From the IMG/VR virus record IMGVR_UViG_3300020084_000003, positions 62,001 through 126,000 of that record: a stretch of DNA of 64,000 nucleotides. The stretch is one strand, 5' to 3'. The first letter of the stretch is position 1, and each line of letters opens with the position of its first letter. The notes beneath the pieces were generated by a model. That model was given only the letters and a program-made list of their open reading frames with translations, made no database searches and had not been told where the DNA came from. This document shows, in pieces, positions 9,564 through 59,049 of the stretch. A program made the position numbers and the translations under genes.

Positions 9564-12500
9564 ATGGGATTAAACACTGACTTAAATGCTGCTCCATACT
9601 TCAATGATTATGATGAAGATAAGAACTATCATCACATATTGTTCAAGCCAAATGTTGCTATTCAAGCAAGAGAACTTACACAATTACAATCTATTCTTCA
9701 ACAGCAAGTAGAGCGTTTTGGTGATAATATTCTTCAAAAAGGAACCATCGTAAAAGGTGGCAACTTCTTTGACTTTAAAAATCTTCCATACGTAAAAATT
9801 TCTGATAACTATGTTAATGTCAATGCTGTTAACATGAAGAGCTTTGATGGTGCATCATTAAGGGGTGTTAACTCAGGTGTTACTGCTATTGTTAGAACAT
9901 TCGTTGAAGGAAGTTCAAGCATGGCTCCAAACCTGAATACTCTATATGTCAAATATACCGGAAGCGGTCTAGACGGTAATGGCAGAGATATTAAAAACTT
10001 CATCCCCGGTGAGGTTTTGGAAGTTTCTATTGGAAATATCGTTCAGCCTGACATTTCAGTTTCAGTAGTTTCTTTTGGCGTCGATCCAAACCCAATCGGT
10101 TTTGGTTACGCAGTTTCATGCGGTGACGGTGTTATTTACCAGAAGGGCCACTTTGTAAGATTTGAAAATCAAATTACAGTAATATCAAAATACGACAACA
10201 AACCAGATGGCGTTGTAGTAGGTTTTATTACAGAAGAAGAAATAATAACAGCAGAGGATGACAACTCATTATACAATAACTCCGGTGGTTTTATTAACCA
10301 AAATACACCGGGCGCAGACAGAATGAAGTTGACCCCGAAGCTGATTGTATATCTAAAAGAAGATGCTATAAATGACGAGAATTTCTTGTCAATTCAAGAA
10401 TACCAAGAAGGTCGTCTTGTTAGAAGAAATGTGGAAACACAATTCAACTCCATTTCAAAAGAATTGGAGAAAAGAACATTTGACGAATCAGGTAACTATA
10501 GCGTAACTGGATACAACATAACAATGGGTGATGAGGATGACAAGAGCAAACTAGAATTGCGCGTCAGCCCCGGCATTTCTTATGTTAACGGTAAAAGAGT
10601 GGAAACTGTAGGTCGTTACGATGTTGAAATAGACAAAGCTACAGAATTTAGCTCAGTATACAACCAAGACATTCTTGCCAACTACGGTAATTTCATCTAT
10701 GTTAATAACGTAGTGGGCGCATTCCCTCTAGATGAACTTAAAACCGTAAACCTTAGAAGTGAACCACAAATAGCGAGTTCTATAGTTGGCTTTACACCAG
10801 CAGGAACAGTCATAGGAACCGCCAGAGTTCTATCATATGATATGGAAAGCAACAATCTCTATAGAGTTTATTTGTTTGATATCAAAATGACAGGCACTAA
10901 CGTATTTTCTTCTGTAAGATCAATTCACTCTACAGAAGCAGGATTTGTTGGTTTCGGAAACGTAATTCTTGAATCTTCAAGAGCGGTCCTTAAAGATACC
11001 AATTTCAGAAGTTTGATATTCCCTCTAGGTCATAGTGCCGTCAAAGAAGTTATTACTGACAATACTGATTATGTTTACAGAAAAAGAACAAACATTTCTG
11101 TCGGCACAACTGGTTCATTCACAATAACTGCTTCTGGTGACGAATCATTCCCCTACAGCGCGGGTTCTGCTCTAACATCTGATTCAATCAGAGATATAAT
11201 TGCGACTAACGCGACCACTGGTGTAAGATATAATATAACTTCTGCATCTGTCGATCCTTCTGGCACAGTTCTAACATTGAATATCGGTGCATTGGGTTCA
11301 AGCCAATCAGTCAACGTTGTATACAACATCAAAAAATTGAAAGTTAGACCTACCGGTAAAATACTTAAAACAGTATACCTTAGAATTAACGCAAACAACC
11401 ACGTCACAGGACCATACTCATTGGGATGGCCTGACGTTCATTCCATTGAAGGAATATGGAGAGGCGCTAACTCTACATTTACTGAAAACTCAACCGGCTT
11501 GACAAACGTCACATCAAACTTTACTTTGCATAGAAATGACAATGATATGTATTATGGCATATCCTTCATAAAGAAGAAAAATGCATATACCATAGCAAAT
11601 ACTGACAGATTCCTTGTCAAAGCTAAAGTTTTTGTCAAAGAAACCACCGGTTCATTCTCACAATCTTTCTTCTGTGTCAACAGCTATCCGGTTGATGATA
11701 ACAGTGAAGTATTGCCGAACGACAAGATAAGAACAGAGCATATTCCAAATGATCTAAGAGATGTAATTGATTTCAGACCGTATGCTGCAAATACTGCAAA
11801 CTATGCAGAAAGTGCAACCTCTGGTGTTTCAACGCAAACATCTACCAACTTGATGAATACCTTGAATTTCCAAGGCAATATGTTCATGGCTGCTCCAAAT
11901 AGATCAGTTGAAACTTCTTATAGCTACTACTTGGCTAGAAGAGACAGACTTATTATAAATGACAAAGGTGAATTTTCTGTTATAAAAGGCGAAAACTCTG
12001 TAAATCCGACCTACCCACAAGAGCCAGCAAGATCAATGACTGTTGCAAGAATAACTGTTCCTGCATTCCCTTCATTGTCTCCTTCTGTTGCTTCTAGAAG
12101 TGGATACCCTGAATATGGTGTAAAGGTTGACATGGACAATAACAGACGTTATACCATGAGCGACATTCAAAGAATAGAAGATAGAATTGGAAATATAGAA
12201 TATTATACAATTCTTAACGCTTTGGAAAAAAGCGCAGAAGATATGGTTATCCAAGATAGCGACGGTCTAAACCGCTTTAAGAATGGTATATTCGTAGATA
12301 ACTTTGATAATATGCTAACCTGTGAAGTAAAAGACCCAGATTTCTCCGCATCGGTCGATTCTGGCGAATCTGCACTATACCCAAGATTTAGAGCATATAA
12401 TTTGGAATTTGCAACACCTACTACTTCTGGTGGAACAGTTCTTAACAACAATACCGTTGCGTCAATGCGTTTCAACAATGTCATAATGGAGCAACAAACA

Positions 12501-15134
12501 TTTGCCACAAAATATAGAAGCTGCGTTACTGACTTCTATAGCTTTGAAGGCGTTGGTGTTTGCTATCCAGAATATGATAACGGATATGACGAAACATATG
12601 CACCAGATATTAACATAAACATAGACTTGGCTGGTGCATTCACAGAATTCACATCCGCGCTGAGTGAGTTTGTCCCTCTTACAACCAAGAATGTCAAAAC
12701 TTTGACAAACTCTACAAATTTGGGAACAACCACCACAACAAATACTGTTAATAGCAGAGCAACTAGAACAAGCACTACCACTGTTACTTCTACCACTAAA
12801 ACAGAAGTCACAAATAAAACAACTACAAATACATCTAGCTTGCAACAAAAATCTACAACTAATACAGACAAGGTTGGGGATTTCATCACCAATATGTCCA
12901 TAAGCCCATTCTTGAGAGCTAATGAAATTAGAGTTGCCTTTGCCGGATTAAGACCAAATACTCGCTTCTGGGTATGGTTTGACGGCAAGCCAATAACTGA
13001 TAGATGCGCTATGGCGTCATTTAGAAGCGATGATAGAGATAATGTTGCAAGAATAATTAGAACAGCAAAATGGGGAACAACCATTAAATCAGATGCAAGT
13101 GGTGAACTTGTTTTCATGATTGATTTGCCGGGCGAGACTTTCTATGTCGGTGACAGAGAAATCCTAGTAATGGATGTTGATAGCATTATTTCAAATGATG
13201 CCGCAACATCTACTGGTGTTGTTACTTACAGAGGCTTCAACTTTAGTGTTGAAAAAACTGGCCTAGAAATGTCAACCAGAACTCCAACATTCGATGTTGC
13301 TAAAACTAGAAATGTTTCTGTAAACAAGAAAATTGTAACTACTCAGCAAGTGACTAAAACAACTGCGGCGTTCGATCCTATTGCACAGACATTTGTTGTA
13401 GACGAATCATACACCAATAGCGACTCATTGATGATAACAAAGGTTGACGTTGCGTTCAATAGAAAAAGTGCCGATAAAGGTATAACATTGCAAGTTAGAA
13501 AAACTGTTAATGGATATCCTAGCGATGAGGTATTGCCTTTCGGTAGCGTAAGATTGAACCCATCCAGCGTTAATGTTTCAGCTAATGGGTCTGCATGGAC
13601 TACTTTCACCTTCAAGTCACCGATTACATTGGCGGCAGGCGAGAGCTACTGTATTGTCCTTCTTCCAGATGGCAATTCACCTGATTATCTAATTTATTGT
13701 GCCAAAACAGGTCAAACCGACCTTAGAACTGGAACAAGAATTACATCTGACGTTAATTTGGGAACACTATTTACTTCCACAAATAACATGGCATGGACAC
13801 CATACCAAGATGAAAACTTGACTTTCAGAATCTATAAAGCTCAATATACCGATAATAGTGGCGATTTGTTCTTCAACTTGAAAGATTATGAATTCTTCAA
13901 TATTGGTTCATATACTGGTAAATTCAGAAGAGGCGAGACTGCATTTGTGGTTAAAGCCAACGCTGCTGGAACCATAAGCACAACAAATGGTTCTCCTGTC
14001 GTAACTGGAACCGGCACAAGCTTCACCAGCTTGTTTGCTCTAGGTGATTATATTGCAATTCATAACTCTACTTCTTCAACTTATGACGTTGCTAGAATTT
14101 CTGCTATTGCAAACAACACATCTATGACTTTGGATGAGGTTATGAAGGACAACAGAACAGGTAGAAACTATTTCAGAACTGTTGCGGGTAAAGTTGATTA
14201 TTTCAACACCCAAGCACCTGAAAAATTGTTCTTGAAAGATTCTAATGCCAAAGACGGCACCGTTTTTGCTAACGGAGATACTGTCAGAGGCGAATCAAGC
14301 AACGCTACTGCTGTTATTTCAAATATCTCAAATCTTCCTATCAGTCATTATCAGGCTAATATATACAGAACAAACTTTGATAATACTGAAACAAGATTGT
14401 TCTTGGATACGCAGACAAACGTAAGCGGAACCAGAAGCGTAGTCAACTTGGTAAATGAATTTGGTGAAAATAACAGACTAGGTAATATGCCAACTGTCGT
14501 TAAGAGTAGAAGCAGAGAAATAACCGAAGACAACGGTGCAAGATCATTGAGATTTAGAGTAAATCTTTCAATGAGCGGTTCAGGTCCATACTATGTATCG
14601 CCTATCGTTGACTATGATATTTCCGGTGTTACCTTGTTTGAATATTTAATAAATCCAACAAGCACTGCGGTTGCTGCCAGTGAAAGGTTCTCAGGCGGCG
14701 ATTCCATGACTAAGCATATTTCCAAAAAGGTTACATTGCGAGATGGTTTGGATGCAGAAGACTTGAAAGTTTGGCTAACTGCGTATAGACCACCAGAGAC
14801 AGAAATTTCTGTTTATGTTAAGTTTATATCCGACATTGACCAAACTCCATTGTCAGAAATTCCTTGGACTAGATTGAATATAAGAGACAACCAAAATCTA
14901 AGATCATCTACAACCAATTTGGAAGATTATCGTGAGATTGAATTTAGTCTTGGAAGCACAAACCTTGGAAATAACGGCGGTGCTTTCTTGAACAACGGAG
15001 ATTTCAGATATCTTGGCAGAAGTGGTGAAGTCTACGAGAACTACAAGCATTTCATAATAAAAATAGTTATGAACAGCACAGGACAGCACAGGATACCTAA
15101 AGTCAAAGATATTCGCGCCATCGCACTAACTTAA
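9564..15134 (+). CDS. VrlC-like (DUF4815-type) large virion structural protein, copy 1
   Basis: N-terminal DLNAAPYFNDYDEDKNYHHILFKP..QARELTQLQ, RTFDESGNY, RRYTMSDI, RFKNGIFVDNF and C-terminal PKVKDIRAIALT. Confidence 0.8.
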   Translation: MGLNTDLNAAPYFNDYDEDKNYHHILFKPNVAIQARELTQLQSILQQQVERFGDNILQKGTIVKGGNFFDFKNLPYVKISDNYVNVNAVNMKSFDGASLRGVNSGVTAIVRTFVEGSSSMAPNLNTLYVKYTGSGLDGNGRDIKNFIPGEVLEVSIGNIVQPDISVSVVSFGVDPNPIGFGYAVSCGDGVIYQKGHFVRFENQITVISKYDNKPDGVVVGFITEEEIITAEDDNSLYNNSGGFINQNTPGADRMKLTPKLIVYLKEDAINDENFLSIQEYQEGRLVRRNVETQFNSISKELEKRTFDESGNYSVTGYNITMGDEDDKSKLELRVSPGISYVNGKRVETVGRYDVEIDKATEFSSVYNQDILANYGNFIYVNNVVGAFPLDELKTVNLRSEPQIASSIVGFTPAGTVIGTARVLSYDMESNNLYRVYLFDIKMTGTNVFSSVRSIHSTEAGFVGFGNVILESSRAVLKDTNFRSLIFPLGHSAVKEVITDNTDYVYRKRTNISVGTTGSFTITASGDESFPYSAGSALTSDSIRDIIATNATTGVRYNITSASVDPSGTVLTLNIGALGSSQSVNVVYNIKKLKVRPTGKILKTVYLRINANNHVTGPYSLGWPDVHSIEGIWRGANSTFTENSTGLTNVTSNFTLHRNDNDMYYGISFIKKKNAYTIANTDRFLVKAKVFVKETTGSFSQSFFCVNSYPVDDNSEVLPNDKIRTEHIPNDLRDVIDFRPYAANTANYAESATSGVSTQTSTNLMNTLNFQGNMFMAAPNRSVETSYSYYLARRDRLIINDKGEFSVIKGENSVNPTYPQEPARSMTVARITVPAFPSLSPSVASRSGYPEYGVKVDMDNNRRYTMSDIQRIEDRIGNIEYYTILNALEKSAEDMVIQDSDGLNRFKNGIFVDNFDNMLTCEVKDPDFSASVDSGESALYPRFRAYNLEFATPTTSGGTVLNNNTVASMRFNNVIMEQQTFATKYRSCVTDFYSFEGVGVCYPEYDNGYDETYAPDININIDLAGAFTEFTSALSEFVPLTTKNVKTLTNSTNLGTTTTTNTVNSRATRTSTTTVTSTTKTEVTNKTTTNTSSLQQKSTTNTDKVGDFITNMSISPFLRANEIRVAFAGLRPNTRFWVWFDGKPITDRCAMASFRSDDRDNVARIIRTAKWGTTIKSDASGELVFMIDLPGETFYVGDREILVMDVDSIISNDAATSTGVVTYRGFNFSVEKTGLEMSTRTPTFDVAKTRNVSVNKKIVTTQQVTKTTAAFDPIAQTFVVDESYTNSDSLMITKVDVAFNRKSADKGITLQVRKTVNGYPSDEVLPFGSVRLNPSSVNVSANGSAWTTFTFKSPITLAAGESYCIVLLPDGNSPDYLIYCAKTGQTDLRTGTRITSDVNLGTLFTSTNNMAWTPYQDENLTFRIYKAQYTDNSGDLFFNLKDYEFFNIGSYTGKFRRGETAFVVKANAAGTISTTNGSPVVTGTGTSFTSLFALGDYIAIHNSTSSTYDVARISAIANNTSMTLDEVMKDNRTGRNYFRTVAGKVDYFNTQAPEKLFLKDSNAKDGTVFANGDTVRGESSNATAVISNISNLPISHYQANIYRTNFDNTETRLFLDTQTNVSGTRSVVNLVNEFGENNRLGNMPTVVKSRSREITEDNGARSLRFRVNLSMSGSGPYYVSPIVDYDISGVTLFEYLINPTSTAVAASERFSGGDSMTKHISKKVTLRDGLDAEDLKVWLTAYRPPETEISVYVKFISDIDQTPLSEIPWTRLNIRDNQNLRSSTTNLEDYREIEFSLGSTNLGNNGGAFLNNGDFRYLGRSGEVYENYKHFIIKIVMNSTGQHRIPKVKDIRAIALT

Positions 15135-15216: not shown

Positions 15217-18200
15217 ATGCCATTAGAGACTGATCTAAATGTTCAACCATACCTTAATGATTATGACGAAGAAAAGAATTATCACAAAATTCTTTTCAAA
15301 GAATCAAACCAATTACAAAGCAGAGAGTTAAACCAACTACAACAAATCCTTCAAGGTCAAATTGAAAGATTTGGTGAAACTGTATTGGAAAGAGGTTCTA
15401 TCGTTCAAGGTGGTAACTTTTACGATTATAAAAAGTTGGCTTATGTTAAAATATCAGATAACAACACCAATAAACAGCCGATAGTAATTGAAAACTATAA
15501 CGGTGCAACTCTTCGCGGTGAAAATAGCGGAGTTATGGCTATAGTAATTACTAATGTTTCTGGTTACGAATCAAAATCACCAGACCTTAACACACTATAT
15601 GTCAGATATACACAAACAGGTCAGGACGCATTCGGAACAGACATTAAAAGATTTATTCCCGGTGAAACTCTGATAGCATATAAAAACAACGAAAGAGTTC
15701 CTGAACTAGATGTTAACGTTGCAACTTTTGGTGTAGATTCCAATCCACTAGGTGACGGTTATGGCGTTTCTTGTGGAGAAGGTATTTTATTTCAAAAAGG
15801 ATATTTCACTCAGTTTGGGCAGCAAATTGTCATAGTTTCAAAATACAATACTAATCCTCACAGAGTGAGTGTTGGTTTTGTTACAGAAGAAACAATTACC
15901 AACTTTAACGCAGATGTGTCTTTAAGAGACAATGCAATTGGTAGCAGAAACTTCAACGCTCCGGGTGCAGATAGAATAAAATTGACACCAACTCTTGTTG
16001 TTTACAGCAAAGAGCAAGCTGATGAAGATGACAATTTCCTTCCAATTCAAGAATATGAAAACGGTCTTCTGGTTAGCAAGCGCACTGGAACATCTTTTAG
16101 CGAATCATTGACTAAATCCATATCCAACAGAACATACGAAGAATCAGGCAACTATACTATAATCGGGCATGTCCCGCAAATAGTTTCTGCGCCGGGATCG
16201 GACAATACCCCCGCATTGGTAATAAATCCGGGTGTGTCTTATGTTAATGGAAGACGAGTAGAAACAATCGAAAAAATATATATTGATTTGAATGCCGTCA
16301 CAGATAATGATGGAAATCAAATTGGTCAAATAAGCACTGCAATGGGCGGATACGTAAACTGCGGTGTTGTTCTAGGTAATGCCGCATTGGCAGAATCCAA
16401 AGCTTTAGTGAATTTGAGAGATGCAGTTCAGGTCAACGTCAACTCCCCTCTTGGCTCTGTCATAGGGACAGCAAATTATATTCAATACGAAAATGTTGAA
16501 AATGGAAACAAGCGCCTGTATCTAACAAACATAAGAATGAATACTGGAAGAAGTTTTTCAGAAACTAGAAGTCTAGAAACACCCACTTTCTTGGCTAACT
16601 TGATTTTGGAATCTGGAAAAGCTGTATATAAAGAAGCATCCAAGTCATCATTACTATTCAGAGCAAATGCCAGTGATATTAGCAATATTACTCTTCCTGT
16701 TTCATACCAATCTTATATGACAGGATTGTTCACTGCCAGCGGCGCAGGAACAATATCAACTACTTTGCAAGCAGGGTTTTCTTTCCCATATGAAAATGGG
16801 GCAACATTGAGCGATGCTCAGTTGAGAGAAATAACAATAATAGGAGAAACTGCCCCACAAACCGGAACCCCAACCTACGGTTCCGTGTCGAGTGATGGTG
16901 CGACTTTGACATTAAACGTTACTCAAATTTATGATGCTGGTGCAGCGGTCAACGCTCTTATTCCAGTTGTCGTCACTTTGAATAATATAGAAACAAAAAC
17001 ACTGTCAACAGTTTATATGAAAATAAACCCTAATGGTATGGCTAACAACACAGCTTTCTTCTTGGGATGGCCTGACGTTCATTCTATTGAAGGAATATGG
17101 AGAGGCGCTAACACCACATTCACTGAAAACTCAACCGGCTTGACAAATGTCACCGATAAATTTGTTTTGGATAAAAATAAGACTCCAACATATTATGGAA
17201 CATCTTTAATAAGAAAGAAAACTGGATATACCATAACAAACTCTGATAGATTTCTGGTTAAAGCAAAAGTATTCAGAAGAGTTGCGCCTAATTTGAAGAC
17301 ATTCTCTGCGATCACTAGCTATCCTATTAATGATACCATAACAACTTTACCGGCCACTAGCATTAGAAGCAATGAATTGGACGAGGATACCAGAACATCT
17401 TTCGATTTCAGATTGTATGTGTCCAATGCTGCGGCGTATTCCACGACTGCGGGTTCCGCTACTATTGCCACAAGCGCATCACAATTGAATGGAACAACCA
17501 TAGAAAATAGTATGGTTTTGCCTAAAGTAAATTCTACTATCAATCTAGGGTTTGAATATAAATTCCCAAGAATTGATAGCTTGATTATAAATGAAAAAGG
17601 CAATTTCTCAGTAAGAAGAGGCGTTCCATCTGAAAATCCAAAAGCTCCATATGTAGATGGAAAGAACATGGTTATTGCCAATGTTTATATCCCTACCGGC
17701 ACTCTTATGATGCCAAATACAGCTAAAAGATTGGGTATGGATGATAAGATAATAACCATAAATTCAAATATGAATAGACGCTATACGATGAGAGACATTG
17801 ATCGTATCAATGAAAGAGTTAACAATATTGAATACTACGCCATACTTTCAGCACTTGAAATGGAAACTGAAAACATGGTTGTCAAGGGTGCAGATGGTCT
17901 TGATAGATTTAAGAATGGTATATTCGTTGATAATTTCGAGACAATGCTTACTTGCGATGTTAAAAATCCAGATTTTGCTGCATCAGTAGATGCCAGCGAT
18001 GCATTGCTATATCCTGCGTTTAAAGCATATAACTTGGATTTGGAAATTGATAGTTTTAGCAGCAGCATCGAAGTGAATACAAACGGCGCGGCTTCTTTGA
18101 AATACAGAAGCGTCCTTCTGGATCAGCAACCAGTTGCGACAAAGTTCAGAAATTGCGTAACAGATTTTTATAATTTTACTGGAACAGGTTACATACATCC

Positions 18201-20841
18201 TGAATACGATTTTGGTTACGACGAAACTGTAGCTCCAACTATTAATAAAACAATTGACATGGTTGGTGCCTTTACTGAATTTACAGATAGGCTAAATGAG
18301 TTTGTTCCACTTAAAACTTCAACATCCACAACTACAAATAATAGCAAAGTAATTGATGTTAAGAAAAATACAAACACAACTACCAGTGTAAGTAACACTC
18401 GTTCCACTAGCACTACTACTGTGACTAGCACAACCAGAACAACTACAACTACTCAAAATACTGCTAAAACTGTAACAAATACAAAAGAATTGGTTAATAC
18501 CGGAACTAAGACAACCACTCAAAATGTCGGTAGTTTCATAACTGATGTTCAGTTCAGCCCGTATTTGAGAGAACAATTGCTGAGAGTAGTGTTCTTTGGA
18601 TTAAGACCAAATACAAGATTCTGGGCTTGGTTCGATAAACAACCAGTTAATGAATGGTGTGCGCCTGCCATAATGGAAGGTGACGACATTACAAAAGTAA
18701 AAAGAATTGGTGCATTTGGAAGTGCGCTAAGGTCCGATTCAAATGGTGAATTGGCTATAGTATTTTCTATTCCTAAATCAAAATTCTTTGTCGGTGACAG
18801 GGAGTTTATCGTGATCGACGTTGACGCAATGAATTCTGCGGACTCTGCAACTTCTAGATCATTGGTTACATTTAGAGGGTTTAACTACAGCATAGAAAAA
18901 ACTGGTTTGGAAGTATCAACCAGAATACCTACATTTGATGTTGCAAAAGCGAGAAGTGTTTCTACCTCAGTAACAACTTCTAGAAATACTACAGTAAATA
19001 CCACATCCACCAGCACCACAAGAGTTATTCCTGTAGTTGATGAAAGAGCGATATGGGGTGGTGACGGCGAAGGTCAAGACCCAATTTCTCAAACCTTCAC
19101 TGTTCCTTCTACTTTAACAGATTATCAAAATATAATGATAACTCATGTTGAAATACCGTTCAAAAAGAAGAGTAACAACAGAGGCATTACTTTGCAACTA
19201 AGAAAAACTGAAAACGGTTTTCCGGGTTCAGAGGTATTGGCGTTCGGTTCAGTTCGCGTCCCAAGCAGTTCAGTTTCAGTTTCTAATGATGGTTCTGCTT
19301 ACACCACATTTAAATTCAAGTCACCAGTATCTTTGAGTGCAGGCGAAAGCTACTGTATCGTATTGATGCCAGATGCAAACTCTCCTGACTATCAGGTATT
19401 TTGTGCAAAAACTGGTGAAATAGATTTGAGAACCGGAAACCGTGTTACATTCGATATTCACTCTGGAACACTCTTTACTTCAACAAATAACATGGCATGG
19501 ACTCCTTATCAAGATGAGAACATGGCATTCAAGATATACAGAGCCGAATATACTGAAAAGAATGGAACAGTAAATCTTAGAACCAAAAACTATGAATTTT
19601 TCAATTTGACCTCTCATGTTGGTGATTTCAAAAGAGGCGAAACTGCGTTTGTCATAAATACCTTCCTTGAAGGAAGTTTGACAACCACATCTGGTTCTAA
19701 TGTTGTTACTGCAAGCGGTATAGATTTAAGAAATATTTTCAAAGCTGGCGACCATGTTGCAATTTATAACAGAACAAATGATACTCATGATGTGTCAAGA
19801 GTTTCTTCTGTTATTAGTGCAACGTCAATGGCGCTGGATGAATACATGACCTTAGACATGACAGGCAGACAGTTCTTCAAGACTTTAGTTGGCACTGTAG
19901 ATTATTTCAATAAAAAAGAACCTGTAAGATTATTCTTGAAAGATTCTGTTGCAAAATCCAATATGGTATTCCAAGCAGGCCAAGCTATCAAGGGCGAAAG
20001 AAGTAATGCGGCGGCTATAATAGACGAGGTAATATCTCTTCCTCTAAGCTATTATCAGGCAGATATTCCAAAATTGGATTTAGTCAATACTTCAACAAAA
20101 TTGGATTTGATTAGACAGACAAACTCATCTGGCAGCATATCATCTATACAATCTTCACAACTGTTTGGTGACAATAACAGATTGTCTAACATGGACACAG
20201 TTATCAAAAGTAGAAGTCTTGAACTATCTCAAAACAATGGTGCAAGATCATTCGTATTGAGAACAACTCTATCTCTTGACGGCAATTCTCCATATACCGT
20301 TTCTCCTGCAATAGATCATTCTATTTCTGGTATAACAGCTTATGAGTATTTAATAAATGATTATACTGATGAAGTTTCTGAGAGCGAACATGGTGAAGAT
20401 GGATTGTCACAATCTAAATATATTTCGAAGGTAATCAACCTTAGAGAAGGTTTTGATGCCGAAGATTTGAACCTGTGGTTGACTGCATACAAACCAGCGA
20501 ATACTGAAATAAATGTTTATGTCAAATTCATTTCAGAAATTGATAACAGAGCGCCCACCGATATAGCATGGACTAAATTGGTATTGCAAGACAGTAGATC
20601 ATTTAGATCATCATCTACAAATACAAATGACTTCAAAGAATACGCATATAAAATACCTGTAGGCGGAAGTGAAAGTTCAATTGGAGCGTTCATAGATGAG
20701 GCTGGAAACTTCAAATACTACAATGCTGACGGCGGATTGTATGATAATTACAAACAGTTTATTGTAAAAATTATCATAAATTCCAAAGGTCAGAATTTTA
20801 TACCAACAGTGAAAGACGTAAGGGCTATAGCATTAACATGA
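15217..20841 (+). CDS. VrlC-like (DUF4815-type) large virion structural protein, copy 2 (paralog of 9564..15134)
   Basis: Colinear similarity to copy 1 from the N-terminus (DLNVQPYLNDYDEEKNYHKILFK) to the C-terminus (PTVKDVRAIALT). Confidence 0.8.
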   Translation: MPLETDLNVQPYLNDYDEEKNYHKILFKESNQLQSRELNQLQQILQGQIERFGETVLERGSIVQGGNFYDYKKLAYVKISDNNTNKQPIVIENYNGATLRGENSGVMAIVITNVSGYESKSPDLNTLYVRYTQTGQDAFGTDIKRFIPGETLIAYKNNERVPELDVNVATFGVDSNPLGDGYGVSCGEGILFQKGYFTQFGQQIVIVSKYNTNPHRVSVGFVTEETITNFNADVSLRDNAIGSRNFNAPGADRIKLTPTLVVYSKEQADEDDNFLPIQEYENGLLVSKRTGTSFSESLTKSISNRTYEESGNYTIIGHVPQIVSAPGSDNTPALVINPGVSYVNGRRVETIEKIYIDLNAVTDNDGNQIGQISTAMGGYVNCGVVLGNAALAESKALVNLRDAVQVNVNSPLGSVIGTANYIQYENVENGNKRLYLTNIRMNTGRSFSETRSLETPTFLANLILESGKAVYKEASKSSLLFRANASDISNITLPVSYQSYMTGLFTASGAGTISTTLQAGFSFPYENGATLSDAQLREITIIGETAPQTGTPTYGSVSSDGATLTLNVTQIYDAGAAVNALIPVVVTLNNIETKTLSTVYMKINPNGMANNTAFFLGWPDVHSIEGIWRGANTTFTENSTGLTNVTDKFVLDKNKTPTYYGTSLIRKKTGYTITNSDRFLVKAKVFRRVAPNLKTFSAITSYPINDTITTLPATSIRSNELDEDTRTSFDFRLYVSNAAAYSTTAGSATIATSASQLNGTTIENSMVLPKVNSTINLGFEYKFPRIDSLIINEKGNFSVRRGVPSENPKAPYVDGKNMVIANVYIPTGTLMMPNTAKRLGMDDKIITINSNMNRRYTMRDIDRINERVNNIEYYAILSALEMETENMVVKGADGLDRFKNGIFVDNFETMLTCDVKNPDFAASVDASDALLYPAFKAYNLDLEIDSFSSSIEVNTNGAASLKYRSVLLDQQPVATKFRNCVTDFYNFTGTGYIHPEYDFGYDETVAPTINKTIDMVGAFTEFTDRLNEFVPLKTSTSTTTNNSKVIDVKKNTNTTTSVSNTRSTSTTTVTSTTRTTTTTQNTAKTVTNTKELVNTGTKTTTQNVGSFITDVQFSPYLREQLLRVVFFGLRPNTRFWAWFDKQPVNEWCAPAIMEGDDITKVKRIGAFGSALRSDSNGELAIVFSIPKSKFFVGDREFIVIDVDAMNSADSATSRSLVTFRGFNYSIEKTGLEVSTRIPTFDVAKARSVSTSVTTSRNTTVNTTSTSTTRVIPVVDERAIWGGDGEGQDPISQTFTVPSTLTDYQNIMITHVEIPFKKKSNNRGITLQLRKTENGFPGSEVLAFGSVRVPSSSVSVSNDGSAYTTFKFKSPVSLSAGESYCIVLMPDANSPDYQVFCAKTGEIDLRTGNRVTFDIHSGTLFTSTNNMAWTPYQDENMAFKIYRAEYTEKNGTVNLRTKNYEFFNLTSHVGDFKRGETAFVINTFLEGSLTTTSGSNVVTASGIDLRNIFKAGDHVAIYNRTNDTHDVSRVSSVISATSMALDEYMTLDMTGRQFFKTLVGTVDYFNKKEPVRLFLKDSVAKSNMVFQAGQAIKGERSNAAAIIDEVISLPLSYYQADIPKLDLVNTSTKLDLIRQTNSSGSISSIQSSQLFGDNNRLSNMDTVIKSRSLELSQNNGARSFVLRTTLSLDGNSPYTVSPAIDHSISGITAYEYLINDYTDEVSESEHGEDGLSQSKYISKVINLREGFDAEDLNLWLTAYKPANTEINVYVKFISEIDNRAPTDIAWTKLVLQDSRSFRSSSTNTNDFKEYAYKIPVGGSESSIGAFIDEAGNFKYYNADGGLYDNYKQFIVKIIINSKGQNFIPTVKDVRAIALT

Positions 20842-56167: not shown

Positions 56168-56513
56168 CTAAAGATATTCCTTCAACGTTGTAAGACATGA
56201 TATCATCATAATCAAATATTCTGTGATTTATACCATTCACTTCTACATCCAAGAGCAGATGGCTTATAATTATGACGTTTTCAAACATGAAAATATCTTT
56301 CAATTCTTGGTATTCTTTGGCTTTAACTACTACCAAACAATCTTTCAGAACGCAGCTTTTAAATTGTATCTTCTTATCTTTGATGTTTCCGAAGTCGAGT
56401 ATTCCATCCATATTTCTATTTTTAATTACGAAATCATTATTAAATTTATTAGTATGTATTAAATATCTATCTGTGCAAAAAACATCTCTTGTTATAAAAA
56501 TGTTATCTTCCAT
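56160..56513 (-). CDS. Hypothetical protein (ATG 56513 preferred over 56582)
   Basis: ORF; the shorter start avoids an 80-bp overlap with the MTase. Confidence 0.5.
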   Translation of the reverse strand: MEDNIFITRDVFCTDRYLIHTNKFNNDFVIKNRNMDGILDFGNIKDKKIQFKSCVLKDCLVVVKAKEYQELKDIFMFENVIIISHLLLDVEVNGINHRIFDYDDIMSYNVEGISLDG

Positions 56514-57048
56514 AAAATTGTATATTGTCCTCTTCACTTTTATTTGGAACAAACAAATACCAGCATACATCGTCTTTGCCACTCATGGTTGTTCCTTCAA
56601 TCCATTTCATTCTTCCTACAGTTACAATTTTTGTGCAGTATTTTTGTAAATATGGGGCAGCTTTCATGGTGAACATCCAGTTCGCATCAAACAAAAACCA
56701 TGTGGGTTTCATTGAAGCAAAATGTTCTATTGAGTGATGTAGCAAATCTCTTGACCAAGGTGGGTTCGAAATGATAAACTCCGATTCGGAAAGATCAGCC
56801 TCAGTAACGTTTATATATGATTTTTCGATGAATGTCAAGTCTGTAATGTTATGTTCGTAATCTGGCTCTATATCAGATGCGTATACACATTTTCCTTCAA
56901 GTTGATTGATTAAATCGCCTCTTCCGCAAAAGGGTTCTGCATATGTATAGGTTTCTGGTAAAAATGGCTTTATAGCCTTTCCCGCTTTAGGATCAAATGT
57001 TCTGTAATAATCCTTAGCAATTCTGTCAAAATCTGACCGCTTACCCAT
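56503..57048 (-). CDS. DNA N6-adenine/N4-cytosine methyltransferase
   Basis: DYYRT, EPFCGRG SAM-binding motif, ISNPPW catalytic motif. Confidence 0.8.
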   Translation of the reverse strand: MGKRSDFDRIAKDYYRTFDPKAGKAIKPFLPETYTYAEPFCGRGDLINQLEGKCVYASDIEPDYEHNITDLTFIEKSYINVTEADLSESEFIISNPPWSRDLLHHSIEHFASMKPTWFLFDANWMFTMKAAPYLQKYCTKIVTVGRMKWIEGTTMSGKDDVCWYLFVPNKSEEDNIQFYGR

Positions 57049-57101
57049 TATAAATCTCCATAATAATTTTATATATGGATTATTTATAACAGAATCTAGT
57101 A

Positions 57102-57207
57102 AATTATGATTGGGCGAAGCCCAATTTTGCGAAGCAAAATTTCATGATTCTTCTTACTTGACAGGACTCATGAAACCCTATAGAGTCTTATAAGAATCAT
57201 GAGTCCT
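57102..57207. repeat. Cluster of inverted repeats including two GCGAAGC mini-hairpins
   Basis: ATTGGGC-GAA-GCCCAAT (57109-57125), AATTTTGC-GAA-GCAAAATT (57123-57141), AGGACTCATGA/TCATGAGTCCT (57163-57173/57197-57207). Confidence 0.85.
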
Positions 57208-57305
57208 ATAATTTAATCACGAATCACAAGATTCATTATATCACAGGTTGTATTTTTGTCAAGTCCCTAAATAAACCTTGACATATTGTCGCAGTGTGAT
57301 AATAT
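57158..57305. promoter_or_regulatory. Divergent/convergent sigma70-like promoters
   Basis: +: TTGACA(57158)-N17-TAGAGT; -: TTGACA(57262-57257)-N16-TATAAT; +: TTGACA(57278)-N16-TAATAT upstream of pnuC. Confidence 0.6.
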
Positions 57306-57341
57306 GGACTCAATCGAATCACTATAACAAGGAGTTTTGTT

Positions 57342-57995
57342 ATGACTATAAAGAAAGACGATTTTCAATTAAATATTATGCTAATTTGCGTAGGTTTTAT
57401 TCTTACGGTTTTAACTCATTATATTTGTGTCATGTTGGGAGTTCAACTACCAGACATTAATATGCTTGAGTTTGTTGCTGTTGCTACTAGCTATACATGC
57501 ACTATCATGTTCGCTATGCAGAAGAGAGCAGCATACTTTTACGGAATTATCAGCACGTTTTTTCTGTGCTGGTTCTTTGCAACACAAGGAATTTTCGCGT
57601 TAGCAATTTTTAACGGTGTTCTAGTTATCAGTTTAATTTACGGATACTGGCGTTGGGGTCCAGATGGACGACCGATTCCAGTTACAAATATCAAAGGTTT
57701 CAAATCATTTGCCGGTTACGGAATGTTTACAGTTATTATCGCAGGTTTATTCCTTCTGCTTGTGGGCGCTTCTTCCAAGATCGACATTTTTCTGGCATCG
57801 GCTTCCGCAACCGCGCAGCTTATGCTAGACAATAAAAAGCTGGAAAACTGGCTTGTATGGATGGTCATTAACGTGTTCTCTATCGTTTTCTTCATTCAAA
57901 GCGGCTTCTGGCTATTGGCAATTCAATTTATGCTATTCTTGCTGAACGCTATTTTCGCGTATTTCTCTTGGAGAAAGGGTCTAGTAAATGTCTAA
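57342..57995 (+). CDS. pnuC: Nicotinamide riboside transporter PnuC
   Basis: Multi-TM; YGYWRW, AQLMLDNKKLENWLVWMVINVFSI motif. Confidence 0.88.
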   Translation: MTIKKDDFQLNIMLICVGFILTVLTHYICVMLGVQLPDINMLEFVAVATSYTCTIMFAMQKRAAYFYGIISTFFLCWFFATQGIFALAIFNGVLVISLIYGYWRWGPDGRPIPVTNIKGFKSFAGYGMFTVIIAGLFLLLVGASSKIDIFLASASATAQLMLDNKKLENWLVWMVINVFSIVFFIQSGFWLLAIQFMLFLLNAIFAYFSWRKGLVNV

Positions 57996-59049
57996 AGATG
58001 AAAAAATTCATGGCCTAATTCTCGGAACGTTCATGCCCTTTCATAAGGGGCATGAACTACTAATCAACTTCGGCAAAGAATATACTGAACAATTTGGGCG
58101 TGGTCGCCTTCTGGTAATTCTTTCATCTCGCAGCAATGAACCCATTTCAGGTAATATGCGTCTGGATGCAATCAGAAAGACTTTTGGAAACGATGTGTCG
58201 ATTTTTCATCATATTGACGATGATGCTCCACAAAATCCAAAAGACAAAGATGACGTTAAATTCTGGGAATACTGGAAGAAAGTTATCACCAAAGCTGCCA
58301 TTCAAAGTAATTTAAATCCATACGCAATAAAGTATGTATTTTCATCTGAAAACTATGGTGACAAAGTAGCAGAAATTATTGATGCAACTCATGTCAAATT
58401 TGACCAAGCTAGAACGGCTGTCCACGTAAGCGGAACGCAAATCAGAAACAACCCTTTGTCAAATTACCAACACATGAACGCGCACATGATTACAAATCTT
58501 CGTCGCAGGTATGTTTTGTTTGGAGCCGAATCGGTTGGCAAGACTACTTCTCTAAAATATCTAGGCAATAGTCACTACGGGTCACATACCCTACCTGAAT
58601 ATGCCAGACCGTTTTTAGAAGAATTGGAAGACAAGTCTCCGTCCGAAAAGAACATGTGCAGTATCTTCATGGCGCAGCATTCTATGGAAATTGCCGCAAT
58701 GAAACAAGTCGGCGGTTCTCTACTGACGTTTATGGATACTGATATCATGTCCACTTTTGGATATGCAAGGCTGGTAAAGATGAAAACAAATCAGTTTGAA
58801 CATTTGGTTCCAATTGATTTTAGAAGAACGTATTTCGTTCTGTCACAAGATGAGGTTCCTTTTGAAAAGGACATTCTCAGATATGGTGGCGATGTAAGAG
58901 AAACCAAGGATAGTTTTTGGATCAATCTGCTAGAAGAATTTAATCTAAGATACTTTGTTGTCAAAGGCGATTTCAGTAGCAGGATGGACCAAATTAACGC
59001 TATAATAGCAAAAGATTTCAAGAAGGACTTTCACTTTAACAGAGAGTAG
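57988..59049 (+). CDS. nadR: NadR-type bifunctional NMN adenylyltransferase / ribosylnicotinamide kinase (no HTH)
   Basis: GTFMPFHKGH, FSSENYG, VSGTQIR; GAESVGKTT P-loop, PEYAR, DTD. Confidence 0.88.
   Translation: MSKDEKIHGLILGTFMPFHKGHELLINFGKEYTEQFGRGRLLVILSSRSNEPISGNMRLDAIRKTFGNDVSIFHHIDDDAPQNPKDKDDVKFWEYWKKVITKAAIQSNLNPYAIKYVFSSENYGDKVAEIIDATHVKFDQARTAVHVSGTQIRNNPLSNYQHMNAHMITNLRRRYVLFGAESVGKTTSLKYLGNSHYGSHTLPEYARPFLEELEDKSPSEKNMCSIFMAQHSMEIAAMKQVGGSLLTFMDTDIMSTFGYARLVKMKTNQFEHLVPIDFRRTYFVLSQDEVPFEKDILRYGGDVRETKDSFWINLLEEFNLRYFVVKGDFSSRMDQINAIIAKDFKKDFHFNRE

What the first reader, a model, noticed from the sequence alone, without database searches (positions are those of the whole stretch)
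57091..57262. Twin GCGAAGC mini-hairpins in a Y-shaped palindrome at the strand switch: candidate origin or ssDNA signal
Seen: two back-to-back hairpins with the identical GC-GAA-GC cap (57109-57125 and 57123-57141), closed by AATTATGA/TCATGATT (57102-09/57142-49). An 11-bp inverted repeat (57163-73/57197-207) follows, with sigma70-like promoters facing each other across it. Knowledge: d(GCGAAGC) is an exceptionally stable DNA (not RNA) hairpin; GNA-triloop hairpins occur in ssDNA-phage origins and N4 virion-RNAP promoters; T4 origins are promoter-driven R-loops. Inference: a DNA-level structural signal (replication origin, primase/packaging or nuclease-protection site) exposed by transcription from the leftward promoter.
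Basis: partly seen in the sequence, partly recalled or inferred. Interest (0 to 1): 0.65.

Follow-up and report, generated by a model that had tools for sequence, protein, structure and literature searches.

The report
Conserved twin DNA mini-hairpins, phage control region
The two small hairpins are real and belong to a three-copy control element of a 285-kb T4-like phage, conserved in related phages with compensating stem changes and loops typical of unusually stable DNA (not RNA) hairpins; it most likely marks an origin-like DNA signal, but no experiment has tested its function.

Summary
The window comes from a 284,776-bp T4-like phage with 38% GC. The twin GC-GAA-GC hairpins at 57109-57141 are one of three such sites in the genome, all on the same strand. 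Each site lies in one of the three densest GANTC clusters, with sites spaced 9-11 bp apart. Each lies 75-130 nt downstream of a near-perfect sigma70 promoter; two of the genome's three 12/12 promoters belong to these elements.

Orthologous twin hairpins occur in about five related metagenomic phage lineages at all three loci. The stems covary: 10 of 13 pairs change on both sides. The loops stay C-GNA-G or C-GNNA-G, the DNA mini-hairpin class. The phage's true terminators look different: 9-13-bp stems, GAAA or UUCG loops and an immediate T-run.

The outer Y stem, the 11-bp inverted repeat and the rightward promoter are not conserved. No N4-type or T7-type RNA polymerase is encoded.

Best reading (about 0.35): a DNA-level structural signal in a transcription-activated, origin-like region resembling T4 oriE/oriF. 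Main rival (about 0.3): a non-canonical terminator or insulator for the strong early promoter. Function is inferred, not shown.

The parts
57109..57125 (+). Hairpin 1 (GC-rich): ATTGGGC-GAA-GCCCAAT. It contains the GCGAAGC mini-hairpin core.
   Evidence: The orthologues keep C-GAA-G or C-GTA-G loops while the stems covary.
57123..57141 (+). Hairpin 2 (A/T-flanked): AATTTTGC-GAA-GCAAAATT. It abuts hairpin 1, overlapping it by 3 nt.
   Evidence: Six of 8 pairs change on both sides among 7 instances.
57102..57149 (+). Outer closing arms AATTATGA / TCATGATT with one T.G mismatch (the Y-shape). Specific to this copy.
   Evidence: There is no equivalent stem in L112 or L113.
57092..57320 (.). Array of 10 GANTC sites, starting at 57092, 57146, 57165, 57183, 57194, 57201, 57221, 57230, 57307 and 57316. 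It includes AAGAATCATGA-type units and GANTC-N4-GANTC pairs just after the -10 boxes.
   Evidence: Spacings of 9-11 or 19-21 bp dominate across all loci.
57163..57207 (.). Each arm is a GANTC+TCATGA unit of the array.
   Evidence: It is not conserved as a long-range repeat in L112 or L113.
57235..57262 (-). P1 (leftward early promoter), TTGACA-16-TATAAT, 12/12, with TG. It is followed by GAATC-N4-GATTC and reads through the array into the twin hairpin about 94 nt downstream.
   Evidence: one of only three 12/12 sites in the genome. Conserved in L112 and L113.
57158..57186 (+). Rightward promoter-like site TTGACA-17-TAGAGT (10/12), 17 nt after hairpin 2. Not conserved.
   Evidence: L112 and L113 have no TTGACA here.
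57278..57305 (+). Rightward promoter of pnuC, TTGACA-16-TAATAT, followed by GACTC-N4-GAATC.
57081..57088 (-). T4-type late promoter motif TATAAATA, lying between the hairpins and the methyltransferase-like gene.
   Evidence: It is also present in L112. The genome has 51 such motifs, 36 of them intergenic.
56503..57048 (-). Flanking gene: a 181-aa protein resembling an N6-adenine methyltransferase (FCGRGD and NPPW motifs). Its specificity is unknown.
   Evidence: Conserved in this position in L112-L114, L118 and L119.
57342..57995 (+). Flanking gene pnuC (nicotinamide riboside/NMN transporter), followed by a nadR-like gene at 57988-59049.

Best explanation
The finding is copy 2 of a three-copy composite control element of a T4-like jumbo phage.

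Anatomy, read in the direction of the leftward promoter:
1. one of the strongest sigma70-type early promoters in the genome (P1);
2. 75-130 nt of AT-rich DNA carrying GANTC sites phased at the helical repeat;
3. two abutting hairpins;
4. the next promoter or gene.

The hairpins' selected features are stem complementarity and C-GNA-G or C-GNNA-G caps on the genome's + strand.

I read the hairpins as a DNA-level signal: single-stranded or cruciform mini-hairpins of the d(GCGAAGC)/d(GCGTTAGC) class that resist melting, SSB coating and nucleases. They would be exposed when early transcription and supercoiling open the easily melted array.

The most likely role is in a transcription-activated replication origin of the T4 oriE/oriF kind. 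P1 transcription would open the array or form an R-loop over it. The extruded hairpins would then either arrest RNA polymerase and so fix the end of the primer RNA, or act as an uncoated landmark for helicase-loader and primase assembly, as in G4-type or RSF1010 ssi signals. The GANTC array would serve as an iteron-like or methylation-gated protein-binding platform.

Shown: the anatomy, the copy number, the conservation and covariation, the loop class, and the contrast with true terminators.
Inferred: hairpin formation in DNA in vivo, and every step of the origin mechanism.
For: - Three same-strand twin sites coincide with the three densest GANTC clusters, holding 17, 10 and 19 sites.
- GANTC spacing is 9-11 bp in 33 of 93 intervals and 19-21 bp in 12 of 93, against 4 at 9-11 bp in the listed background of spacings up to 40 bp elsewhere in the genome.
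- Orthologous twin hairpins occur at all three loci in relatives sharing 64-83% protein identity: L112, L113, L115, L028/L031, L117 and L120.
- Covariation: hairpin 1 has 4 of 5 pairs changed on both sides and 96.7% of cells paired. Hairpin 2 has 6 of 8 and 98.2%. None of 500 shuffles reached the covariation score. No one-sided change occurs except at the outermost pair.
- Loops: hairpin 1 has GAA eight times and GTA once. Hairpin 2 has GAA five times, GTTA twice, CTTG once and AAA once. GCGNAGC and GCGNNAGC are the two DNA mini-hairpin classes. The Tm is 76.5 C for DNA, against 39 C for r(GCGAAAGC); TTC loops behave as ordinary. Such motifs occur at the G4, St-1 and alpha3 origins, in RSF1010 ssiA and in N4 promoters (PMC13037366).
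- A third GCGAAGC caps a 9-bp hairpin in copy 3 and in its orthologue L120.
- In copy 3 the extended stems are lost but the heptamers are kept.
- True terminators of the same genome differ: 28 intergenic stem-loops with 9-13-bp stems, GAAA or UUCG loops and an immediate T-run.
- In the copy-2 family the T-run lies 5' of the stem in both orientations. The terminator scan flags nothing at the window hairpins.
- P1 is 12/12 in copies 2 and 3 and in L120. There are only three 12/12 sites in 285 kb.
- The copy-1 array between P1 and the hairpins is the third least stable 100-bp duplex window in the genome.
- Position: copy 1 lies between uvsW/uvsY and the topoisomerase genes. Copy 2 lies at a transcription divergence point. 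T4 origins combine a promoter with an AT-rich unwinding element. oriE has evenly spaced repeats and depends on an early promoter, and several origins lie at divergence points (PMC3016281).
- No conserved ORF runs through the hairpins (three different frames, read). There is no Rfam match.
Against:
- GC skew only follows gene orientation and gives no independent support.
- The stable-loop strand is the template strand of P1, not the strand an R-loop would displace. The simplest R-loop plus displaced-hairpin model therefore does not fit.
- L116, a 65% relative, has GAATCAT arrays upstream of the topoisomerase gene but no twin hairpin. The two features are separable.
- In L117 the element is inverted relative to P1. 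Its second hairpin then carries a CUUG loop and a U5 tail, which looks like an RNA terminator.
- Copy 3 and L120 have a U6-7 run 6-7 nt after the hairpins in the P1 direction.
- Two of nine hairpin-2 loops (CTTG, AAA) are not of the G..A class.
- The absence of internal G.T pairs is not significantly different from the terminators (5 of 108 against 28 of 296, p = 0.15).
- Stem segments were picked as hairpins, so the percentage paired is partly true by construction.
- No initiator protein has been identified.
- The ViennaRNA DNA parameters show no strand asymmetry. The extra stability of the + strand rests on the literature.
Confidence: 0.35

Rival explanations
1. RNA-level terminator, attenuator or insulator (a PeSL-like cassette). 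The twin hairpins would stop or dampen transcripts from the very strong early promoter P1 before they run into the next promoter or into a late-expressed gene. They might act in both directions.
For: - The hairpins always lie downstream of P1 and upstream of the next promoter: P2 in copies 1 and 3 and the late TATAAATA motif in copy 2 and L112.
- T4-like phages are known to combine strong sigma70 promoters with stem-loops that terminate (PMC2839356).
- The scan flags hairpin 2 of copy 1 as terminator-like on the + strand.
- L117 has a G(CUUG)C loop plus U5 in the P1 direction.
- Copy 3 and L120 have U6-7 runs close by.
Against: - In the P1 direction the RNA loops are UUC, UAAC or UAC, which have no known special stability. 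The conserved G..A pattern lies on the other strand.
- No adjacent U-tract is present in the window copy, L112, L113 or L028, where the T-run is 5' of the stem in both orientations. The window scan finds no terminator there.
- The stems are 4-8 bp, against 9-13 bp with GAAA or UUCG loops in the genome's 28 clear terminators.
- If termination were efficient, the strongest promoters in the genome would make only a roughly 100-150-nt non-coding RNA.
- The helical phasing and palindromy of GANTC point to DNA.
Confidence: 0.3
2. A transcriptional control hub without an origin function. The phased GANTC arrays would be operators or methylation-sensitive sites for a host or phage regulator that times the early promoters, for example a CcrM/GcrA-type system of an alphaproteobacterial host or the adjacent small methyltransferase. 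The hairpins would be a cruciform or bend that organises the nucleoprotein complex, or a 5'-UTR element.
For: - GANTC-N4-GANTC pairs sit directly after the -10 box of P1 and of the pnuC promoter, and this is conserved in L112.
- GANTC lies in the promoter spacers in L115, L116, L117 and L120.
- Palindromic units such as GATTCTATAGAATC occur.
- The nearest isolated relatives infect Caulobacter and Sinorhizobium, hosts in which GANTC methylation and GcrA control sigma70 promoters (PMC3667746, listed, abstract only).
- A methyltransferase-like gene is conserved next to copy 2.
- L116 has arrays without hairpins.
Against: - The host is unknown.
- The phage encodes no GcrA, CcrM-type or Dam-type protein.
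- Overall GANTC frequency is ordinary: 861 sites against about 990 expected.
- Other strong promoters in the genome carry no GANTC.
- This reading does not explain why the hairpin loops keep the DNA mini-hairpin class, or why two hairpins abut.
- No CtrA or DnaA boxes are present.
Confidence: 0.2
3. A site for DNA cleavage or recombination: a packaging (pac-like) site, a resolvase or endonuclease target, or a hotspot for recombination-dependent replication. Extruded cruciforms would be cut, or the mini-hairpins would protect the ends.
For: - Copy 1 has five GANTC sites, a 60-bp gap holding the hairpins, then five or more GANTC sites. From my own knowledge, this resembles the two clusters of Dam sites that flank the P1 pac cleavage site.
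- A RuvC-like resolvase gene lies 1.6 kb from copy 2.
- Mini-hairpins resist nucleases.
Against: - There are three copies per genome.
- T4-like phages package by headful without a fixed site (my knowledge).
- The record is circularly closed with no defined ends.
- No reads evidence was obtainable.
Confidence: 0.08

Closest known systems
DNA mini-hairpin motifs d(GCGNAGC)/d(GCGNNAGC) at phage and plasmid initiation sites (complementary-strand origins of G4, St-1 and alpha3; RSF1010 ssiA)
   Same: The heptamer and octamer cores are identical (GCGAAGC, GCGTTAGC, CCGAAGG). Several hairpins sit side by side on one strand. The motifs lie in non-coding DNA next to replication genes (PMC13037366).
   Different: Those systems are ssDNA phages, or a plasmid with its own primase. 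Here the genome is 285 kb of dsDNA and T4-like, no priming has been shown, and the hairpins are embedded in GANTC arrays and sigma70 promoters.
T4 replication origins: oriF/oriG (promoter plus AT-rich unwinding element, R-loop) and oriE (early promoter plus evenly spaced repeats)
   Same: A strong promoter reads into an easily melted AT-rich repeat array. There are several sites per genome. They lie at strand-divergence points or near uvsY/uvsW (PMC3016281).
   Different: T4 origins share no hairpin motif. The oriF and oriG promoters depend on MotA. The oriE repeats are 12-nt direct repeats, not phased 5-bp palindromes. Origin activity is untested here.
PeSL cassettes of T4-like phages (early promoter plus stem-loop)
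   Same: They are composite intergenic modules of a consensus sigma70 promoter and a stem-loop in a T4-like genome (PMC2839356 and PMC4122927).
   Different: PeSLs are numerous, flank ORFans in hyperplastic regions, and have GGGG/CCCC-type stems with G.T pairs that terminate transcription. This genome has its own such family (GGTGTGGCA-GAAA-TGTCACACC). The twin hairpins occur only three times, two of them next to core genes, with different loops and no adjacent U-tract.
Phage N4 virion-RNA-polymerase hairpin promoters
   Same: The stems are 5-7 bp with a 3-nt G-purine-A type loop (GAA or GGA) on one strand. They extrude from duplex DNA and are recognised as DNA.
   Different: No vRNAP or T7-like RNA polymerase gene was found (although the control genomes did not ring either). 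The largest ORFs are tail fibres and baseplate proteins. Here the hairpins are twinned and lie downstream of sigma70 promoters.
Clusters of adenine-methylation sites at origins and pac sites (GATC at E. coli oriC bound by SeqA; P1 pac and oriR)
   Same: Short palindromic methylation-type sites cluster densely, phased on one face of the helix, around a central functional site (my knowledge).
   Different: The motif is GANTC, not GATC. Methylation and a binding protein have not been shown, and the host is unknown.

Membership tests
DNA mini-hairpin class (GCGNAGC / GCGNNAGC) | The sequence is C-G-N(1-2)-A-G, closed by G-C/C-G pairs, on one strand. | tested here: met
   All 9 hairpin-1 loops and 7 of 9 hairpin-2 loops fit. 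The window copy has GCGAAGC twice.
DNA mini-hairpin class (GCGNAGC / GCGNNAGC) | The motif actually folds as a single-stranded or extruded DNA hairpin in vivo. | not testable with these tools
   The ViennaRNA DNA parameters show no strand asymmetry. Chemical or enzymatic probing is needed.
Intrinsic (Rho-independent) terminator | A GC-rich stem is followed directly by a U-tract on the transcribed strand. | tested here: not met
   The scan reports no terminator at 57102-57149 on either strand. In the copy-2 family the T-run is 5' of stem 2 in both orientations. Copy 1 passes only on the + strand, antisense to its flanking genes.
PeSL cassette | A consensus sigma70 early promoter is combined with a stem-loop in an intergenic region of a T4-like phage. 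| tested here: met
PeSL cassette | There are many copies flanking ORFans in hyperplastic regions, and the stem-loop acts as a terminator. | tested here: not met
   There are only three copies, two of them next to uvsW/topoisomerase and rnlA. A separate family of at least 9 copies with GAAA loops fills that role. Terminator activity is untested.
N4-type hairpin promoter | A virion or T7-like single-subunit RNA polymerase is encoded by the phage. | tested here: not met
   PF00940 gives no match, although the control genomes gave none either. The ORFs of 1,000 aa or more are baseplate or tail-fibre proteins, or have no family hit.
N4-type hairpin promoter | The stem is 5-7 bp with a 3-nt loop that has a purine at its centre. 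| tested here: met
   (GAA loops, 5-8-bp stems).
T4 R-loop origin (oriF/oriG type) | A promoter is followed by an AT-rich downstream unwinding element. | tested here: met
   P1 is followed by an array of 21-31% GC. The copy-1 array ranks third least stable in the genome; copies 2 and 3 fall in the top 2.5% and 0.3%.
T4 R-loop origin (oriF/oriG type) | The element gives autonomous replication, or nascent DNA starts there, during infection. | not testable with these tools
GC skew is uninformative.
Iteron origin (T4 oriE or plasmid type) | Evenly spaced direct repeats are bound by an initiator protein. | tested here: inconclusive
   There is regular 9-11-bp phasing of GANTC and a 20-nt unit repeated twice in copy 1. 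However, the cores are 5-bp palindromes and no initiator has been identified.
G4-type / ssi priming signal | Adjacent hairpins on the strand that becomes single-stranded direct the primase. | not tested
   Only the structural resemblance was seen. Which strand is exposed is unknown.

The most novel reading that the evidence does not exclude
This would be a previously undescribed kind of dsDNA-phage origin or control hub. Twin d(C-GNA-G) mini-hairpins would extrude from one strand when the genome's strongest early promoters fire. They would be read as DNA structure by the replication or recombination machinery, and would be gated by helically phased GANTC sites (sites of the CcrM methylation type). 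That would make it an epigenetically timed, structure-specified origin in T4-like jumbo phages.
Probability: 0.2. Interest if true: 0.8.

Novelty: new variant of a known kind. Interest (0 to 1): 0.6.

Why it matters
Origins of T4-like phages share no sequence motif and remain poorly defined, even in T4. A compact element that is recognisable by sequence and conserved at syntenic positions would give a directly testable candidate for origin or early-control function in a large, uncultured clade of jumbo T4-like phages.

The element combines the genome's strongest early promoters, a phased array of methylation-type sites and twin ultra-stable DNA hairpins. If confirmed, it would be, to my knowledge, a new natural occurrence of the d(GCGAAGC) and d(GCGTTAGC) mini-hairpins under demonstrable purifying and compensatory selection in a large dsDNA phage. 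It would extend a phenomenon so far tied to ssDNA phages, RSF1010 and N4.

If it proves to be only an odd terminator, it still shows that one phage keeps two distinct hairpin grammars side by side.

Tried and rejected
1. N4-type promoter: no single-subunit RNA polymerase was found, and the large ORFs are tail proteins.
2. T7-like promoter: ACGACTC-TATA strings in copies 1 and 3 look like one, but there is no polymerase. The GAYTCTATA motif is confined, among intergenic regions, to the three loci, so it is not a general promoter.
3. Micro-ORF through the hairpins: three different reading frames in copy 1, copy 2 and L112, so this is rejected.
4. Twin GNA hairpins upstream of the topoisomerase gene in the distant (about 58% identity) clade: they lie inside a 63-aa ORF with its own ribosome-binding site, so they are not homologous elements. 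The 80 IMG/VR loci of that clade have no GANTC arrays.
5. Caulobacter phage Cr30 has no GANTC triple arrays. No deposited phage matches either intergenic region.
6. Pattern scan of IMG/VR for the twin motif plus TTTCAT: it returned only a near-identical fragment of the same phage, plus chance hits.
7. Rfam: no match.
8. GC skew follows gene orientation only.
9. The G.T wobble contrast with terminators is not significant.
10. Abutting hairpins in general are not rare.
11. No CtrA or DnaA boxes. No GcrA, CcrM-type or Dam-type genes.
12. Sequence search of the methyltransferase-like protein against PDB chains: nothing useful.
14. The genome search could not reach the Logan and ENA contigs of the relatives, so copy numbers in those genomes are unknown.
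Full report
**What the window is.** The window is bases 62001-126000 of a 284,776-bp IMG/VR virus record with 38% GC. A second IMG/VR fragment bridges the ends of the record, so the record is circularly closed.

The phage is T4-like, with baseplate wedge and long-tail-fibre proteins, UvsW and UvsY, both topoisomerase II subunits, RnlA and T4-type TATAAATA late motifs. No deposited phage is close. The nearest isolates, at 32-37% protein identity, are Caulobacter phage Cr30 and the Sinorhizobium phiM12 group. The host is unknown.

The finding lies in the 293-bp spacer between two divergent genes. One is a 181-aa protein resembling an adenine methyltransferase (56503-57048, minus strand; FCGRGD and NPPW motifs). 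The other is pnuC, followed by nadR (57342 onward).

**The observation.**
- The two hairpins share three bases.
- The outer stem has one T.G mismatch.
- The leftward promoter is a perfect 12/12 consensus with a TG extension.
- The rightward promoter facing it scores 10/12.

The heptamer by itself is not enriched in the window, and abutting hairpins in general are common. What is far from chance is the following.

**It is a repeated element.** GCGAAGC pairs 15-17 nt apart on the + strand occur three times in the genome: at 9762/9777, at 119114/119129 (this finding) and at 156479/156496. A further GCGAAGC caps a 9-bp hairpin at 156587. I estimate about 0.02 such pairs by chance.

The three sites are exactly the three densest GANTC clusters in the genome, with 17, 10 and 19 sites. 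Within these clusters, and in their orthologues, neighbouring GANTC sites are 9-11 bp apart in 33 of 93 intervals and 19-21 bp apart in 12 of 93. In the listed background of spacings up to 40 bp elsewhere in the genome, only 4 are 9-11 bp. The sites therefore lie on one face of the helix, in DNA of 21-32% GC.

Recurrent units are AAGAATCATRA (11 of its 29 genomic copies lie at the three loci) and GAYTCTATA. Among intergenic regions, GAYTCTATA is found only at these loci.

**Promoters.** The genome has only three 12/12 sigma70 sites. Two of them are the leftward promoters of copies 2 and 3.

All three copies share one layout in the minus direction:
1. a strong promoter, P1;
2. 75-130 nt of phased array;
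3. the twin hairpin;
4. the next promoter (copies 1 and 3), or a TATAAATA late motif (copy 2);
5. the gene.

In copy 1 the array between P1 and the hairpins is the third least stable 100-bp duplex window in the genome.

**Relatives.** Protein searches with the topoisomerase subunit, PnuC and RnlA, followed by contig look-ups, gave about five related lineages at 64-83% identity. Twin hairpins sit at the orthologous place at all three loci.

| Locus | Copy | Hairpin 1 | Hairpin 2 |
|---|---|---|---|
| L112 | 2 | TTGGGC-GAA | ATTTTGC-GAA |
| L113 | 2 | GTGGC-GAA | GTTTTTGC-GTTA |
| L115 | 1 | CGCGC-GAA | AAAGACGC-GAA |
| L028/L031 | 1 | GGCC-GAA | CATTTTGC-GTTA |
| L117 | 1, inverted | TTGGC-GTA | AAAAACG-CTTG |
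| L120 | 3 | CGCGC-GAA | CAAGACGC-AAA |

The hairpins always abut, always with the GC-rich one first, and GANTC arrays flank them.

Pair counts:
- Hairpin 1: 4 of 5 pairs changed on both sides, 96.7% of cells paired.
- Hairpin 2: 6 of 8 pairs changed on both sides, 98.2% of cells paired.
- No shuffle reached the covariation score, and slid controls fell to 8-60% paired.

L117 was left out of the hairpin-2 count because its loop misaligned. One caveat applies: the segments were chosen as hairpins, so the percentage paired is partly true by construction. The two-sided changes between orthologues are the real signal.

P1 and the GANTC pair after its -10 box are conserved. The Y-closing stem, the long-range inverted repeat and the rightward 10/12 promoter are not. 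One 65% relative, L116, has the arrays but no hairpins. A more distant clade (about 58% identity, 80 loci) has neither. Apparent twin hairpins in that clade lie inside a small ORF.

**DNA or RNA?** The selected loop pattern on the + strand is G-N-A or G-NN-A closed by C-G. It holds for all 9 hairpin-1 loops and 7 of 9 hairpin-2 loops. These are the two classes of DNA mini-hairpin.
- It resists nucleases and binds SSB poorly.
- The RNA versions are far weaker, and TTC-loop hairpins behave as ordinary.
- GCGTTAGC is the St-1/alpha3 origin motif, and CCGAAGG is the RSF1010 ssiA motif (PMC13037366).

The sense transcripts from P1 would carry the complementary UUC, UAAC or UAC loops, which have no known special property.

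The same genome provides an internal control. Its 28 clear intergenic terminators have 9-13-bp stems, GAAA or UUCG loops and an immediate T-run. They include a family of at least 9 copies, GGTGTGGCA-GAAA-TGTCACACC, with a conserved internal G.U pair.

The twin hairpins have 4-8-bp stems. In the copy-2 family the T-run lies on the 5' side in either orientation. The terminator scan reports nothing at the window hairpins.

In copy 3 the long stems have decayed but the heptamers persist.

Several observations weaken this argument:
- Two hairpin-2 loops (CTTG, AAA) do not fit the class.
- The inverted L117 element looks like a small RNA terminator in the P1 direction.
- U-runs lie 6-7 nt beyond the copy-3 hairpins.
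- The lack of internal wobble pairs is not statistically distinct from the terminators.

**Mechanism.** I favour a DNA-level signal, at roughly 0.55-0.6 overall. Within that, I favour a transcription-activated origin (0.35). The arrangement of a strong early promoter, an easily melted phased repeat array and a stable structure matches how the T4 origins oriF and oriG (promoter plus unwinding element, R-loop) and oriE (early promoter plus evenly spaced repeats) are built. The positions, at a strand divergence and beside uvsW/uvsY and the topoisomerase genes, also fit (PMC3016281).

The hairpins could arrest RNA polymerase and fix the primer end. Alternatively, they could act as an SSB-free landmark for helicase-loader and primase assembly, as proposed for G4-type and ssi signals.

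The weak point is strand logic. The stable caps are on the template strand of P1, not on the strand an R-loop would displace. None of these steps has been shown.

**Rivals.**
- A non-canonical terminator or insulator of P1, PeSL-like (0.3; PMC2839356).
- A purely regulatory hub whose GANTC sites are operators or methylation-sensitive sites (0.2). The phage encodes no GcrA, CcrM-type or Dam-type protein. The adjacent small methyltransferase-like gene is the only candidate enzyme.
- A cleavage, packaging or recombination site (0.08).

The N4-promoter analogy fails for want of a polymerase.

**Limits.** The relatives' full contigs could not be searched.

**Verdict.** The feature is real, conserved and lineage-specific. 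It is a new composite variant built from known ingredients: DNA mini-hairpins, a promoter-plus-repeat origin architecture, and clusters of methylation-type sites. Its function is open, but experiments can test it directly.

Noticed in passing
G000:C1:142043-153755 (outside the window), minus strand: At least nine near-identical stem-loops, GGTGTGGCA-GAAA-TGTCACACC plus a T-run, with a conserved internal G.U pair. cUUCGg terminators also occur at 128466, 128972 and 135001. These look like the PeSL-type terminators of the hyperplastic region.
   Followed up: partly
G000:C1:132921-132951, 134112-134142, 138008-138038 (also 133168 and 137980): A second repeated twin-palindrome family: GTTTCGC-N-GCGAAAC next to the perfect 16-bp palindrome TGTTTCACGTGAAACA. 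It looks operator-like and is unexplained.
   Followed up: no
window 56503-57048 (-): A 181-aa protein with FCGRGD and NPPW motifs that matches PHROG 799 'DNA methyltransferase' and has no Pfam hit above threshold. It is the only methyltransferase candidate in the genome and has its own TATAAATA late motif at 57088-57081. Its target site is unknown; GANTC would be an obvious guess to test.
   Followed up: partly
L028:650-1100 and L031:~900-1340: The 79-83% relatives carry a conserved non-coding stretch of about 450 nt between two GANTC arrays upstream of the topoisomerase gene. G000 lacks it and Rfam gives no match. It could be an ncRNA or an inserted element.
   Followed up: no
G000:C1:11547-12413 (-): A 288-aa ORF with no family hit (only a faint ArcA-like winged-helix signal, E = 0.004) sits between uvsY and uvsW. 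In relatives L115 and L116 these two genes are adjacent.
   Followed up: no
L119:2973-3917: A SegE-like GIY-YIG homing-endonuclease gene is inserted between pnuC and nadR in one relative.
   Followed up: no
window 1792-7341, 9564-15134, 15217-20841: Three neighbouring ORFs of about 1,850 aa. The second and third are paralogues (PHROG 358/877). The first has a baseplate-wedge N-terminus.
   Followed up: no
G000 ends, via L016: IMG/VR fragment IMGVR_UViG_3300020083_000084 is 99.98-100% identical to the record and spans its two ends with a 136-bp overlap. The 'linear' record is therefore a closed or circularly permuted genome.
   Followed up: yes
window 43169 (+) and 46236 (-): The two other GCGAAGC heptamers in the window are isolated. 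They have no GAA-loop hairpin with a stem of 5 bp or more and are consistent with chance.
   Followed up: yes
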